NCBI RefSeq assembly: GCF_006345805.1
Contig: NC_043013.1
Location: 34,782,001 to 34,846,000, forward strand
DNA from: Octopus sinensis
Lineage: Eukaryota
DNA length: 64,000 bases
Direction of reading: 5' to 3'
Both the position numbers and the translations under genes were made by a program. Below, piece by piece: positions 12,263 through 55,391 of the stretch; the stretch's first letter is position 1, and each line of letters opens with the position of its first letter. The notes under the pieces are model-generated. The model was given only the letters and a program-made list of their open reading frames with translations, was not told where the DNA came from and did not search any database.

Positions 12263-12636
12263 ACAAAGTTGACCTTGGGGGAATTTGAGCTCAGAACGTA
12301 AAGACAGATGAAAAGCAGTAGAGATAAGTTGCGATGTCAATGATGCCAAGCTGTATCAGCCTTTGCCTTTCCTCTGGATAACATCAGAGGCTTGCAGTTC
12401 TATATTTAAGAGATGAGGAATTACATACATTTTTTACATTATTTACATTATTTACAAAGTTGACCTTGGGGGAATTTGAGCTCAGAACGTAAAGACAGAT
12501 GAAAAGCAGTAGAGATAAGTTGCGATGTCAATGATGCCAAGCTGTATCAGCCTTTGCCTTTCCTCTGGATAACATCAGAGGCTTGCAGTTCTATATTTAA
12601 GAGATGAGGAATTACATACATTTTTTACATTATTTA
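12263..12636. repeat. 183-bp direct duplication (period 191)
   Basis: 12263-12445 matches 12454-12636, with an 8-nt spacer. Confidence 0.9.
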
Positions 12637-12936
12637 TGTTCTTTACATTTAACAGATATTTGTCCTCATCTTATGGTGTAGTGGTTAAGAGCGTGGGCTA
12701 CTAACCCCAAGATTCCGAGTTCGATTCCAGGCAGTGACCTGAATATTAATAATAATAATGATAATAATAATAATAACATCAAAAAATACCTTAGGGATGA
12801 GAACCCAGGTTCGAAATTTCCCCAAGACACCTGAATAAGGGTAGAGGGTATATCAGCCAAAACGTTTTAACAACAAACAAGATGAGGACAAATATCCGTC
12901 GAATGTAAATAATGTAACTAATGTAAAAAATGATAA
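12586..12936 (+). mobile_element. Family F tRNA-headed, hammerhead-carrying SINE with inverted tail copy at the 5' end; 9-bp TSD
   Basis: A box TGGTGTAGTGG (12674-12684), B box GTTCGATTC (12719-12727), (AAT)n, then a degenerate hammerhead (CTGAATA...CAAAAC, 12826-12870) and tail. 12586-12673 is the reverse complement of the family tail. AGAGGCTTG is duplicated at 12577-12585 and 12937-12945, within a family-C SINE host. Confidence 0.85.
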
Positions 12937-14219
12937 AGAGGCTTGGACAGGGGAGGCTGGTATGCAGGGGAGACTGCTGGCCTTCCATAAACATCCTTGC
13001 TCACACTGTTACTCGGAGGGAAACTTTCTAGGTGCAATTCCATGGTTATTTATGATTGAAGGGAAGCTTTGCCCTTTTATTTTGAAGATGATAGGGATAT
13101 CAAATAAGGGAGATTTAGCTGCGATTTTTAACATGCCAAGCACATAGAAAGTCTCTCATTAGTTGGTGTTGGTCATGGTGGTAATGGCAACTGCAGTGAT
13201 GTTAATAATTACAGTGGTTTTTAGTGTTTCCAGTGATGCTAGTACTGATAAGAACCATGGTACTGCCAATGCTTTGCATCTCTGGCTTTACCAAACTGCA
13301 GGTTTGATTGATAGCCTAATTAACAAAGACATCTAATTAGTTTTGTTTGCAATATCTAATTTGAAATTCCAACAGCTATCTTGTTGTTTTTTAAACTATC
13401 ACTTTACAGCTAATTTCAATTTCTGGTGAATATTTGCAGGTTTTTTTTTTTTTTTTGCTTTGTTTGTTTTTAGAATCAATTAGGAGAGTAAAGAAGTGTG
13501 TGTGTGTGTGTGTGTGTGTGTGTTAGGGTGGTAGTGGTGGTGGTGGAATATGATGATTTCAAAGTAGTGACATTTGAGGGAGAGAGAGAGAGAGATGAAG
13601 AGGGAGTAAGGGAAAAGAAGAGAGCAGTACTAAAAACAGAGTGGAACAGAAAGAGAGAGAAGGAAAGAAGGTGCTTGCAAGAGAAAGGAGTGGGATAAAA
13701 AGAGAAAAAGAAGAGGGCACAGAGGGAGTAATAAAAGAGGAAAGTGGCACATAAAATGAAAGAGAGAGCGGGGGGGATAATATAGAGAGTTAAGAAACTA
13801 AGAGAGAAAAAAAGCAGAGGGTGAAAAATGAGAGAGAAAGAAAGAAGACAATGAGAAGAGAGAGAGAGAGAGAGAAGAAAAAAAGAGGGGGAAAAACAAG
13901 TGAATAAGAAAGAGAAAATGAGAGAGGGAATGAGCAGAAAGAGAGAAGGAAAAGCAAGAAGAGAAGGTAATATATTGAAGTCATAAAAAAGAGATTGAGA
14001 TATGTGTGTGTGTGTGTATGTGTGTGTTTGTGTGTGAGGTACCTTAAACTAAACAACAAATCACTTTTAATATGACACAAAAGGTAACACTTAAAATTAA
14101 ATAAATGAAATTATTTCAGAAATAAATTAAATTTAAATCATTGTAATATGGTTTTTATTGCCAGCAGTCTTCTGCTAATTGTTTGCCAAGCAAGTCTGAC
14201 TCTAATAATAACAATCATA

Positions 14220-14760: not shown

Positions 14761-14932
14761 TCTCTCCACCCCACTAATTTTATCGAAGGGAATGGTAATG
14801 GCCAATACAGCTTGGAACCAGTGACATCACAACTCATTTCTACAGCTGAGTGAACTAGAGCAACGTGAAATAAAGTGTCTTGCTCAAGAATACAGCACAC
14901 AGACTGGTCTGGGAATTGAACTCACTACCCAA

Positions 14933-14978
14933 GACACCTGATGAAGGCTGGATGGTATATCAGTCGAAACGTTGTGTT
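14933..14978 (+). ncRNA. Minimal type-I hammerhead ribozyme motif with intact core, in a 5'-truncated family F copy (about 14929-15038)
   Basis: GACAC-CUGAUGA-A-GGCUG-gaugguauau-CAGUC-GAAA-CG-UU-GUGUU. Helix I is GACAC/GUGUU, helix II is GGCUG/CAGUC (one G-U), helix III is the palindrome ACGU. Predicted cleavage after U14973. Confidence 0.75.
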
Positions 14979-16102
14979 AACAACAAACAAGATGAGGACA
15001 AATATCCGTCGAATGTAAATAATGTAACTAATGTATAAAGACAGCAATTTTAGCAATTGACAAGTACTTTATTGATTCCAGAAAGATATATCTGACTTAG
15101 GCAAGATTTGAACTGCCAAACTATTAGTGGAATAATAATTTGCTTAGATGCAGGCATTGCTGTGTGGTAAGAAGATGCCTCCCAATCACATGGCTCTGGG
15201 TTCAATCCTACTGTGTGGTACTTTGAGCAAGTGTCTTCAATTATAGCCTCAGGGAGACTAAAATCCTTGTGAGTGGATTTGGTAGACAAAAACTGAAATC
15301 CCATCATGTATGTCATCAACGTCATCATTTAACGTCCATTGTCCAGCTGGCATGGGTTGGATGGTTTGACAAGAGCTGGTAAACTGAGAAGCTGCACCAA
15401 GTTCCAGTCTGATTTGGCATGGTTTCTACAGTTGGATGCTCTTCCTGATGCCAACCACTCCAAGAGTGTAATGTGTGCCACCAGTATGCCACCAGCATGG
15501 GTGCCAGTTGTGTGACATCAGTATCTGCCATAACTACACTTTCACTTCTCTTGAATCTTCTCAACCACAGAATATTGCCAAATATCTCTGTCATTTGTTA
15601 TTGCCTCCAAGAGGCCCATACATAAAACGATGAGTATATAGGGATAAACTATCCCAGTAGGTACTGTAAGAGCTCTCAGGTATGTTCCAGGTTCTGGCTA
15701 ACCACATCATGTAGTAAAAAGTATCAGAGATCACTAAGGGTGAGCAATCCCACTGTAATTCTTCTGATGAGTAAATCTGAGTTATATCATTATCTCTTTT
15801 ACTTGTCTGATACTTTATAAACCCCTTCAGGGTTGATGACGTACCAGCCAAGTAAATGAGTTGGTGACATTGGCTAACCCCTACTCAATATTTGTGCCTA
15901 TCTTTTTTTAGTCACTCTGCTGGTTCTATCAAGTTAATAATCACTTCAGTACAGATCTCCAAACACAATTTTGGGAATAGAATTTGGAGAGTACAACCGC
16001 CACACTCTCTGATCAGTATATATTTTATGGAATATAGAAGAAAGAAAAATAAACTCATTCTTACAGGAAATTAATTCAGAATGCAAAGATTTATGACTAA
16101 TA

Positions 16103-54804: not shown

Positions 54805-54944
54805 AATATGCTTCAACACACGTACTCACATAAAGAATCTTGCAAACCAAATCCCCAAACGAAATATTGTAATACAATTATGGCAATAATTACAACAATA
54901 ATAATAATAATTACAATAATAATCCTTTCTACTAAGGGCACAAG

Positions 54945-55272
54945 TACATTATTTACATTTGACGGATATTTGTCCTCATCTTGTTTGTTGTTAATACGTT
55001 TCGACTAATACACCCTCCAGCCTTCATCAGGTGTCTTGGTGAAATTTCAAACCTAGGTTCTCATTCCTAAGGTATTTTTTGTTGTTGTTGTTGTTGTTGT
55101 TACTGCTGCTGCTGCTGCTGTTGTTATTGTTATTATTATTATTCAGGTCACTGCCTGGAACTCAAACGTTGTGTTAACAACAAACAGGATGAGGACAAAT
55201 ATCTGTCAAATGTAAATAACGTAAATAATGTAAATAATGTACATAATTCCTCATCTCTTAAATATAGAACTG
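54945..55272 (-). mobile_element. Family F copy (minus strand) with inverted tail copy at the 5' end; about 12-bp TSD
   Basis: Hammerhead core on minus at 54991-55037 (CUGAUGA-A-GGCUG...UAGUC-GAAACGUA; 3' strand of helix I deleted). The head is truncated near 55160, followed by a plus-oriented tail at 55163-55272. Flanks TAAGGGCACAAG (54933-54944) and TAAAGGCACAAG (55273-55284) belong to a family-D SINE host. Confidence 0.82.
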
Positions 55273-55391
55273 TAAAGGCACAAGGTCTGAAATTCGAAGG
55301 AGGGGGATAGTTGATAACATCGACTCCCGTGTTTCACTGGTACTTAATTAATCAACCCTGAAGGGATGAAAGGCAACGTTGACTTTTGCAG

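What the first reader, a model, noticed from the sequence alone, without database searches (positions are those of the whole stretch)
14929..15038. tRNA-promoter SINE (family F) carrying an intact minimal hammerhead ribozyme
Seen: 14933-14978 has every conserved hammerhead core nucleotide (CUGAUGA, GAAA, UH), a 5-bp helix I, a 5-bp helix II and a palindromic ACGU helix III. The longer copy at 12674-12936 shows this motif downstream of pol III A/B boxes and an (AAT)n spacer. Known: minimal type-I hammerheads with palindromic helix III work as dimers in PLEs, newt satellite 2 and schistosome Sm-alpha (which also has a tRNA-type promoter). An extra A after A9 is tolerated, as in the CChMVd plus-strand hammerhead. 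Inference: this is an Sm-alpha/retrozyme-like self-cleaving SINE in a cephalopod, possibly producing monomeric or circular RNAs.
Basis: partly seen in the sequence, partly recalled or inferred. Interest (0 to 1): 0.85.

Follow-up and report, generated by a model that had tools for sequence, protein, structure and literature searches.

The report
Octopus SINE with Penelope-type hammerhead
The motif is a complete minimal hammerhead ribozyme inside a broken copy of an abundant tRNA-headed octopus repeat that inserts the way Penelope-like retrotransposons do, so it is probably a SINE that uses Penelope machinery; cleavage itself is untested.

Summary
Window 14933-14978 reads GACAC-CUGAUGA-A-GGCUGG-loop-UCAGUC-GAAA-CGU-U|GUGUU: every hammerhead core base, a 5-bp helix I, a 6-bp helix II and a palindromic ACGU in place of helix III.

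A strict descriptor found the motif 25 times in 250 kb of real sequence and never in 20 shuffles. It is the consensus of a family of roughly 10^4 copies.

The family unit is a tRNA-like head with A and B boxes, a (TAA)n spacer, and a 190-bp 3' module holding the hammerhead about 66-93 nt from the end. The window copy (14928-15035) is a 5'-truncated fragment with no promoter.

The extra base after A9, long helix II, short helix I and palindromic 15.1-16.1 define the minimal hammerheads of Penelope-like elements (PLEs).

The insertions also carry PLE hallmarks:
- inverted head-to-head partner copies inside a single 7-15 bp target duplication
- a 27-bp 3' extension on only one arm
- variable 5' truncation

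Autonomous PLEs in the same genome carry their own minimal hammerhead, a U3-A8 variant.

No tandem arrays were seen, so a retrozyme or circular-RNA lifestyle is unlikely. The partner PLE was not identified, and cleavage and pol III transcription are untested.

The parts
14928..15035 (+). 5'-truncated copy of the family's 3' module (consensus positions 53-160). It lacks the head, the spacer and the 27-bp 3' extension.
   Evidence: BLAST to the family consensus, 97% identity; genome hits begin at query base 9.
14933..14937 (+). Hammerhead helix I, 5' strand (GACAC).
   Evidence: Pairs with GUGUU at 14974-14978; in the monomer MFE fold.
14938..14945 (+). Core C3-A9 (CUGAUGA) plus an unpaired A before G10.1.
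   Evidence: In 100 unselected genomic copies, 84 keep CUGANGA, and N7 (U82/A18) is the only common polymorphism.
14946..14965 (+). Helix II: GGCUGG / UCAGUC, 6 bp including two G.U pairs, with an 8-nt loop.
   Evidence: The genome-wide major variant is CAGCC, fully Watson-Crick at that position, in 95 of 100 copies.
14966..14973 (+). G12 A13 A14, the palindromic A15.1-C15.2-G16.2-U16.1 (ACGU) with no loop, and H17 = U. The predicted cut lies between 14973 and 14974.
   Evidence: A13-A15.1 are unchanged in 100 of 100 copies; the two CpGs decay fast.
14974..14978 (+). Hammerhead helix I, 3' strand (GUGUU).
   Evidence: 94.5% of helix I cells are paired across 33 copies.
12672..12743 (+). tRNA-like head of a near-full-length copy. 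A box TGGTGTAGTGG; B box GAGTTCGATTCC.
   Evidence: 97% identity to head consensus positions 6-77; sequence. Not called a tRNA by ARAGORN.
12744..12768 (+). (AAT)n spacer between head and 3' module.
   Evidence: the spacer is present and variable in length in all full copies.
12769..12931 (+). 3' module of the same copy, with a decayed hammerhead (CTGAATA, CAAAAC, 3-nt deletion) and no 3' extension.
12586..12672 (-). Inverted partner arm (module positions 114-191, with the 3' extension) abutting the 5' end of the head.
   Evidence: The pair is flanked by AGAGGCTTG at 12577-12585 and 12937-12945.
54945..55160 (-). Copy with head positions 59-77, spacer and module 1-151. The core motifs are present but the helix I 3' strand is deleted.
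55164..55272 (+). Inverted partner arm (module 92-191, with the 3' extension) of the 54945-55160 copy.
   Evidence: The pair is flanked by GGCACAAG at 54937-54944 and 55277-55284.
12395..12449 (-). Orphan 3'-tail fragment of the family (module 137-191).

Best explanation
**What it is.** The motif is the hammerhead of a composite non-autonomous retroelement present in roughly 10^4 copies. It has three parts:
- A 77-bp tRNA-like head carrying pol III A and B boxes.
- A (TAA)n spacer.
- A 190-bp 3' module of Penelope-like (PLE) type. This holds a minimal type-I hammerhead, then a 66-nt tail ending in (AATGTAAAT)n, then an optional 27-bp extension.

**How it most likely works.**
- Inferred: pol III starts at the head and reads through the whole unit.
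- Inferred from the insertion scars: a PLE reverse transcriptase/GIY-YIG endonuclease recognises the 3' module and integrates the element. This leaves variable 5' truncation, an inverted second copy at the 5' side, one target duplication around both arms, and a short extension on one arm only.
- Inferred by analogy: the hammerhead has no helix III of its own. If it cleaves, two RNAs must pair through ACGU and swap helix I strands, forming a double hammerhead.
- Shown: the hammerhead is kept in the source copies as part of the PLE-type cis module. After insertion, copies decay neutrally.

The window copy at 14928-15035 is a dead, promoter-less fragment that happens to keep the motif intact.
For: **Motif and statistics.**

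**Family consensus and structure.**

**Whole-genome exact-pattern counts** (controls all 0):
- 6487 and 7231 for the two module anchors
- 2558 for the 33-mer covering the 3' half of the hammerhead plus downstream sequence
- 3492 for the head

**Head and module are linked.** 16 of 47 exact heads have an anchored module within 1.5 kb downstream on the same strand. The chance expectation is about 0.001 per head (my estimate from the copy density, not a tool output).

**Features of PLE minimal hammerheads** listed in PMC4209133, all present:
- an unpaired base between A9 and G10.1
- a G10.1-C11.1 pair
- a long helix II and a 4-5 bp helix I
- a palindromic 15.x-16.x
- 'dual motifs 100-700 bp apart on opposite strands'

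**PLE insertion hallmarks** as described in PMC8557442 and PMC8969392:
- By my reading of the BLAST table, 19 of 32 sampled loci have an inverted partner abutting the 5' end.
- All 9 close pairs on 50 Mb of C1 are (-,+); none is tandem.
- About a dozen of the 19 pairs examined have visible 7-15 bp target duplications spanning both arms.
- In 15 of 16 pairs, only one arm carries the 27-bp extension.

**The whole unit is mobilised.**
- In L024 both arms include the head, inside a single 15-bp duplication.
- A variant with a 570-bp insert in the spacer occurs at three loci.

**PLEs in the same genome.**
- 4846 first-look GIY-YIG candidates.
- L038 has an RVT_1 + GIY-YIG ORF. A U3-A8 minimal hammerhead lies about 62 nt from its 3' end.
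- U3-A8 is the same core covariation reported for Cercyon PLEs.

**Source-level constraint.** The common polymorphisms fall at N7, in loop 2 and at 11.2 (G-C versus G.U). All are positions a hammerhead tolerates.
Against: - No sequence similarity was found between the module and the 3' ends of the 30 PLE loci that could be fetched. The partner is not identified.
- The head is not recognised as a tRNA by ARAGORN or Rfam.
- Only about a third of exact heads have a detectable module. The head may also serve other tails, or exist as a short head-(TAA)n element.
- The double-hammerhead fold (-17.3 kcal/mol) is less stable than the predicted dimer MFE (-25.8). A local hairpin, GUUGU/ACAAC, competes for the helix I 3' strand.
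- Folding z-scores are ordinary.
- 5' ends of truncated copies do not pile up at the cleavage site, so cleaved RNA is not the usual template.
- PLE minimal hammerheads cleave poorly in vitro.
Confidence: 0.7

Rival explanations
1. Inherited relic. The module derives from a PLE 3' end, and the hammerhead sequence is carried along only because the family is young. It neither cleaves nor matters for mobilisation of this element.
For: - Copies are about 95% identical with no compensatory changes.
- Naiad PLEs proliferate without canonical hammerheads (PMC8557442).
- In vitro activity of PLE minimal hammerheads is low.
- No 5'-end pile-up at the cut site.
- Fold stability is unremarkable.
Against: - The consensus is a perfect motif despite two fast-decaying CpGs inside it. 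Only 34% of copies keep the 3' half.
- All common subfamily polymorphisms sit at tolerated positions: N7, loop 2, and 11.2 as G-C or G.U.
- Three unrelated hammerhead sequences in this genome keep the same architecture with different helices.
Confidence: 0.2
2. Conventional LINE-dependent tRNA SINE. The hammerhead is an independent acquisition used for RNA processing, and the inverted pairs arise from twin priming or local rearrangement.
For: - Octopus genomes hold many active LINE clades and hundreds of SINE families (PMC13282606).
- The tail ends in a short tandem repeat, (AATGTAAAT)n, as some LINE tails do.
- No PLE with a matching tail was found.
Against: - Twin priming inverts part of one template, so it does not give two arms covering the same sequence. 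Here both arms overlap extensively inside one duplication.
- The one-sided 27-bp extension and the hammerhead architecture are specifically PLE features.
Confidence: 0.07
3. Non-LTR retrozyme. Tandem units are transcribed, cut at two hammerheads and ligated into small circular RNAs.
For: Retrozymes are now argued to be PLE derivatives and exist in molluscs.
Against: - No tandem same-strand neighbours among 152 sampled copies; 9 of 9 close pairs are inverted.
- There is one hammerhead per unit.
- The hammerhead is the minimal type, not the canonical type I found in invertebrate retrozymes.
Confidence: 0.03

Closest known systems
Minimal type-I hammerheads of Penelope-like elements (Cervera & de la Pena 2014, PMC4209133; Lunse et al. 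2017, not readable here)
   Same: - Core CUGANGA...GAAA...UH, with no helix III hairpin and a palindromic 15.x-16.x.
- An unpaired base between A9 and G10.1, and a G10.1-C11.1 pair.
- A long helix II and a 4-5 bp helix I.
- Thousands of dispersed copies, often paired on opposite strands 100-700 bp apart.
- Located near the 3' end of the element.
   Different: Here the motif sits in a unit that starts with a tRNA-like pol III head instead of a PLE ORF or pLTR. No homology to a sampled PLE tail was found.
Sm-alpha / Sj-alpha SINE-like elements of schistosomes (Ferbeyre 1998 and Laha 2000, as summarised in PMC6765202 and PMC8490949)
   Same: A short, high-copy, non-coding retroposon with a pol III-type promoter and a hammerhead in the same transcript.
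   Different: - Sm-alpha carries a canonical, experimentally active type-I hammerhead and often occurs in tandem arrays, where cleavage frees monomers.
- The octopus element has a minimal hammerhead, no tandem arrays, and inverted-pair insertions.
- No sequence comparison was made.
Metazoan non-LTR retrozymes (PMC7229834; bioRxiv 10.64898/2026.07.22.740005)
   Same: Non-autonomous, hammerhead-bearing and AT-rich, with larger TSDs. Proposed to depend on PLEs.
   Different: Retrozymes are tandem repeats of 170-400 nt with canonical type-I hammerheads, expressed as circular RNAs. This family is dispersed, has a pol III head, and carries one minimal hammerhead per unit.
Autonomous EN+ PLEs of the same genome (L037, L038, L047 and related loci)
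   Same: - A minimal hammerhead about 60 nt from the 3' end.
- Insertion in or next to microsatellites.
- 5' truncation.
   Different: - Their core is the U3-A8 covariant with no extra base.
- Helix II is GGUUC/GAACC and helix III is ACAUGU.
- There is no detectable sequence similarity to the SINE module.

Membership tests
Hammerhead ribozyme, minimal type I (PLE class) | Conserved core C3 U4 G5 A6 N7 G8 A9 ... G12 A13 A14 ... A15.1-U16.1, with H17 not G | tested here: met
   The consensus of 100 unselected copies is identical.
Hammerhead ribozyme, minimal type I (PLE class) | Helices I and II base-paired, with a G10.1-C11.1 closing pair | tested here: met
   5 bp and 6 bp; 95.9% of cells paired in 33 copies; both helices appear in the monomer MFE.
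Hammerhead ribozyme, minimal type I (PLE class) | No helix III hairpin; palindromic 15.x-16.x that can pair between two copies | tested here: met
   ACGU is self-complementary. The double-hammerhead pairing is nested and evaluates to -17.3 kcal/mol, though it is not the MFE.
Hammerhead ribozyme, minimal type I (PLE class) | Unpaired nucleotide between A9 and G10.1 | tested here: met
   A at 14945; kept in 97 of 100 copies. The feature is listed in PMC4209133.
Hammerhead ribozyme, minimal type I (PLE class) | Compensatory covariation in the helices | tested here: inconclusive
   None within the family, which is 95% identical. Across three unrelated hammerheads in this genome, the helices differ in sequence but stay paired.
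Hammerhead ribozyme, minimal type I (PLE class) | Self-cleavage 3' of H17 | not testable with these tools
   Needs in vitro transcription of monomer and dimer RNAs.
Rfam hammerhead families (Hammerhead_1, _3, _II, HH9, HH10) | Score at or above the gathering threshold | tested here: not met
   No hit at gathering threshold or at E<=10. These models expect a helix III hairpin.
tRNA-derived SINE | Internal pol III A box (TRGCNNAGTGG) and B box (GGTTCGANNCC) at tRNA-like spacing | tested here: met
   Consensus head has TGGCGTAGTGG (exact) and AGTTCGATTCC (10 of 11), about 43 nt apart. The box consensus sequences are from general knowledge.
tRNA-derived SINE | Head recognisable as a tRNA | tested here: not met
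   ARAGORN found 0 genes in the window and in 8 loci. Rfam gave no tRNA hit at E<=10.
tRNA-derived SINE | Short, non-coding, dispersed, high copy number, flanked by target duplications | tested here: met
tRNA-derived SINE | 3' region shared with an autonomous partner | tested here: inconclusive
   No similarity to 30 PLE loci.
PLE-dependent (Penelope-type) insertion | Inverted 5'-truncated copy adjoining the 5' end, both arms within one target duplication | tested here: met
   19 of 32 loci by my reading of the BLAST table; TSDs around pairs; 9 of 9 close pairs are (-,+) genome-wide.
PLE-dependent (Penelope-type) insertion | Short 3' extension, about 30-40 bp, present at only one end of the insertion | tested here: met
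   A 27-bp extension on exactly one arm in 15 of 16 pairs. The feature is described in PMC8557442.
PLE-dependent (Penelope-type) insertion | Partial tandem (pseudo-LTR) arrangement | tested here: inconclusive
   One partial tandem (L018); none among the 9 close pairs.
Non-LTR retrozyme | Head-to-tail tandem repeats, each with a hammerhead | tested here: not met
   0 same-strand close pairs among 152 copies.
Sm-alpha family | Sequence homology to Sm-alpha, and a canonical type-I hammerhead with loop-loop contacts | not tested
   No reference sequence was available in the tools. The hammerhead here lacks helix III.

The most novel reading that the evidence does not exclude
This is a SINE in the strict sense (a pol III tRNA-like head) that parasitises Penelope-like elements rather than LINEs. 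It has kept the hammerhead as part of the roughly 190-nt minimal cis module, which would imply the hammerhead or its fold is required for PLE-type reverse transcription or integration.
Probability: 0.4. Interest if true: 0.7.

Novelty: new variant of a known kind. Interest (0 to 1): 0.5.

Why it matters
Thousands of minimal hammerheads lie scattered in animal genomes, mostly unattached to any recognisable PLE, and their role is described as unknown (PMC7761336).

This family suggests one explanation for such orphans: short pol III-headed elements that borrow PLE machinery.

If that holds, the roughly 190-nt module is a natural minimal substrate. It could be used to ask what PLE enzymes recognise, and whether the hammerhead is needed for cleavage, for folding or for neither.

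It would also add PLEs to the list of autonomous partners that SINEs exploit.

Tried and rejected
- **Rfam scans** at gathering and E<=10 thresholds gave no hammerhead or tRNA hit. The weak hits to the EBV sisRNA family, snoRNA families and mir-297 fall on simple repeats.
- **ARAGORN** found no tRNA in the heads.
I fetched no more DNA after that. I used only whole-genome exact-pattern counts. Their listings print the matched strings for the first 100 places, and those strings served as the unselected sample.
- **BLAST and local alignment** of the SINE against 30 PLE loci showed only microsatellite or compositional similarity.
- **A metagenome scan** for the tail 28-mer gave 0 hits.
- **Thermodynamic folding** neither supports nor refutes the ribozyme.
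- **Within-family covariation** is uninformative.
- **Lunse 2017 and Ferbeyre 1998** are not held in the library.
- **Full-text searches** found no paper linking a hammerhead to an octopus or cephalopod SINE. Repbase, Dfam and SINEBase could not be queried.
- **Rejected idea:** that the module merely lands in the (TAA)n tail of an unrelated SINE. Pairs in which both arms carry the head sit within a single target duplication (L024).
Full report
**1. The observation**

Window 14933-14978 reads GACAC CUGAUGA A GGCUGG AUGGUAUA UCAGUC GAAA CGU U GUGUU. All eleven invariant hammerhead core bases are present.
- Helix I is 5 bp (one G.U).
- Helix II is 6 bp (two G.U) and is closed by G10.1-C11.1.
- A15.1-C15.2-G16.2-U16.1 is the self-complementary ACGU with no loop.
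- H17 is U, so the predicted scissile bond lies between 14973 and 14974.

The loose pattern CTGATGA-N(10-36)-GAAACGT occurs twice in the window against 0.01 expected. A full structural descriptor gave 25 hits in the 250 kb I hold. It gave none in 20 shuffles, and a relaxed version gave 1 hit in 20 shuffles.

Rfam's hammerhead models do not score the motif. They require a helix III hairpin.

**2. The family**

The 119-nt query found at least 1336 first-look candidates in the 2.72-Gb genome. Matches start at window 14928 and end near 15035.

Whole-genome exact-pattern counts, each with a reversed-pattern control of 0:

| Pattern | Matches |
|---|---|
| Anchor around the 5' core | 6487 |
| Anchor around the 3' core | 7231 |
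| 33-mer: 3' half of the hammerhead plus downstream | 2558 |
| Head 21-mer | 3492 |

With about 3-4% divergence at non-CpG sites, this implies on the order of 10^4 copies.

Alignment of about 45 copies gives the unit:
- Head: GGGCATATGGCGTAGTGGTTAAGAGCGCGGGCTACTAACCCCAAGATTCCGAGTTCGATTCCAGGCAGTGACCTGAA
- (TAA)n of very variable length
- A 190-bp module: ...ATCGAAAAATACCTTAGGAATGAGAACCCAGGTTCGAAATTTCCCCAA-[hammerhead]-AACAACAAACAAGATGAGGACAAATATCCGTCAAATGTAAATAATGTAAATAATGTACATA
- An optional ATTCCTCATCTCTTAAATATAGAACTG

The window copy at 14928-15035 covers only module positions 53-160. It is a truncated, promoter-less fragment.

The longer copy at 12672-12931 has the head, the spacer and the module, but a decayed hammerhead. 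The copy at 54945-55160 has lost the helix I 3' strand.

**3. State of the hammerhead across copies**

I used the first 100 places listed for each anchored pattern as an unselected sample.
- CUGANGA is intact in 84 of 100.
- The only common core polymorphism is at N7 (U 82, A 18), the one core position that is free in hammerheads.
- The 3' half is exact in 34 of 100. Another 36 differ only at the two CpG dinucleotides (C11.1-G12 and C15.2-G16.2).
- A13, A14 and A15.1 are unchanged in all 100.
- The major subfamily has CAGCC, making helix II fully Watson-Crick at that pair. The window's CAGUC (a G.U pair) is a minor variant.

So the ancestral sequence is a perfect minimal hammerhead, and copies decay as neutral DNA. 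The variants shared by many copies sit where a hammerhead tolerates change: N7, loop 2, and 11.2 as G-C or G.U. This is modest evidence for constraint on the source copies.

Within the family there are no two-sided compensatory changes. At 95% identity that says nothing either way.

**4. Which kind of hammerhead**

Cervera and de la Pena (PMC4209133) define the minimal hammerheads of Penelope-like elements by these features:
- no helix III
- palindromic 15.2-16.2
- a conserved G10.1-C11.1 pair
- a long helix II and a 4-5 bp helix I
- thousands of dispersed, often single motifs
- 'dual' motifs 100-700 bp apart on opposite strands

Every one of these holds here. The 'extra A' is therefore diagnostic rather than anomalous.

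**5. How the element inserts**

- By my reading of the BLAST table, 19 of 32 sampled loci have a second copy in inverted orientation abutting the 5' end of the first.
- About a dozen of the 19 pairs I examined have a single visible 7-15 bp target duplication spanning both arms. They include L003, L005, L007, L011, L012, L014, L017, L024 and L028.
- The two window pairs are among these. One is flanked by AGAGGCTTG at 12577-12585 and 12937-12945. The other is flanked by GGCACAAG at 54937-54944 and 55277-55284.
- In 15 of 16 pairs, only one arm carries the 27-bp 3' extension.
- Among 152 distinct copies on the first 50 Mb of C1, all 9 close pairs are (-,+). None is (+,-) or same-strand.

The following are described as peculiarities of PLE insertions (PMC8557442; PMC8969392):
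- an inverted 5'-truncated copy next to the upstream end
- a short extension at only one end
- variable 5' truncation
- a liking for microsatellites

Twin priming by LINEs would not give two arms that cover the same sequence.

**6. Is the head part of the unit?**

- In L002 and L024 both arms include the head and meet 5' end to 5' end. In L024 the pair sits inside one 15-bp duplication.
- In L005, L010, L014, L017 and L028 the full arm begins at head position 1-6, directly beside the truncated inverted arm.
- A variant with a 570-bp insert inside the spacer occurs at three loci at 87-90% identity. The whole unit was therefore copied.
- Head counts are about half the module counts, as expected with 5' truncation.
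- 16 of 47 exact heads have an anchored module within 1.5 kb downstream. Chance expectation is about 0.001 per head, my estimate from copy density.

Caveats:
- About a third of heads linked is less than the 55-60% I would expect if every head had a module.
- One head followed only by (TAA)n and other sequence was seen. The head may therefore also exist with other tails.
- ARAGORN and Rfam do not call the head a tRNA. The pol III claim rests on an exact A box, a 10-of-11 B box, and the clustering of 5' ends at head position 1.

**7. PLEs in the same genome**

The GIY-YIG profile found 4846 first-look candidates.

L038 encodes an RVT_1 plus C-terminal GIY-YIG ORF. About 570 nt after the stop, and about 62 nt before the 3' end, lies AUUU-UUGAUAA-GGUUC-loop-GAACC-GAAA-CAUGU-A-AAAU. 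This is a minimal hammerhead with the U3-A8 core covariation, as reported for Cercyon PLEs.

A third type sits as an inverted pair inside (TA)n in L039: CUGAUGA-A, a 7-bp helix II, and the palindrome ACGAUCGU.

The three hammerheads share architecture and distance from the 3' end but have different helix sequences.

No sequence similarity links the SINE module to the sampled PLE tails. The partner is not identified.

**8. Mechanism**

Shown:
- the motif
- the family structure
- the insertion scars
- neutral decay of copies

Inferred:
- pol III transcription from the head
- recognition of the 3' module by a PLE RT/EN
- cleavage only as a double hammerhead formed by two RNAs

The double-hammerhead pairing is possible but is not the predicted minimum (-17.3 against -25.8 kcal/mol). 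A local hairpin, GUUGU/ACAAC, competes for helix I.

Truncated copies do not start preferentially at the cut site, so cleaved RNA is not the usual template.

With one hammerhead per transcript and no tandem arrays, circular RNA is unlikely.

**9. Comparison and novelty**

The motif is a member of the known PLE minimal-hammerhead class.

The element works like Sm-alpha in joining a pol III promoter and a hammerhead (PMC6765202). It differs in hammerhead type, genomic arrangement and insertion scars.

It is not a retrozyme.

Full-text searches found no paper describing a hammerhead in an octopus or cephalopod SINE, nor a tRNA-headed SINE dependent on PLEs. Repeat databases could not be checked.

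I rate it a new variant of a known kind.

Noticed in passing
window 14800-14927: A different SINE-like repeat (...GTGTCTTGCTCAAGAATACAGCACACAGACTGGTCTGGGAATTGAACTCACTAC) directly abuts the truncated copy. A related sequence precedes the (TAA)n in L019.
   Followed up: no
L038:2357-2402; also L047, L051, L052, L053, L050: Autonomous RT + GIY-YIG PLE copies carry a minimal hammerhead with the U3-A8 core covariation, about 62 nt from their 3' end, next to (TA)n.
   Followed up: partly
L039:883-1036: A third hammerhead type: CUGAUGA-A, a 7-bp helix II with one mismatch, and an 8-nt palindrome ACGAUCGU. It is present as a head-to-head inverted pair of about 200-bp elements embedded in (TA)n.
   Followed up: partly
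L020:820-1390; L014 and L009 homologous: A 570-bp sequence sits inside the (TAA)n spacer. It is shared by three separate loci at 87-90% identity, so this long variant of the element was itself copied.
   Followed up: partly
L010:1050-1710: The inverted duplication extends at least 70 bp beyond both 3' ends: the flanks are inverted repeats of each other and there is no direct target duplication. This is a larger palindrome than in the other pairs.
   Followed up: no
Family consensus module positions 36-55 (window 12804-12823): CCCAGGTTCGAAATTTCCCC just upstream of helix I resembles a second B box or tRNA T-arm. The module may contain a remnant of a second tRNA-like unit.
   Followed up: no
window 14971-14984: The palindrome GTTGTGTTAACAAC overlaps the helix I 3' strand. 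It forms a competing hairpin in the predicted fold of the whole module.
   Followed up: no
L024 and L025 (G000:C9 89.74 Mb and 89.17 Mb): The same inverted pair, with the same flanks, occurs twice 570 kb apart. This is a segmental duplication or an assembly duplicate.
   Followed up: no
L009:742-809 (-): A head followed only by (TAA)n and then an unrelated retrotransposon-like sequence. The head may exist without the hammerhead module.
   Followed up: partly
window 12395-12449 (-): An orphan 55-bp fragment of the family's 3' end, including the 27-bp extension, 137 bp to the left of the 12586-12931 pair.
   Followed up: no
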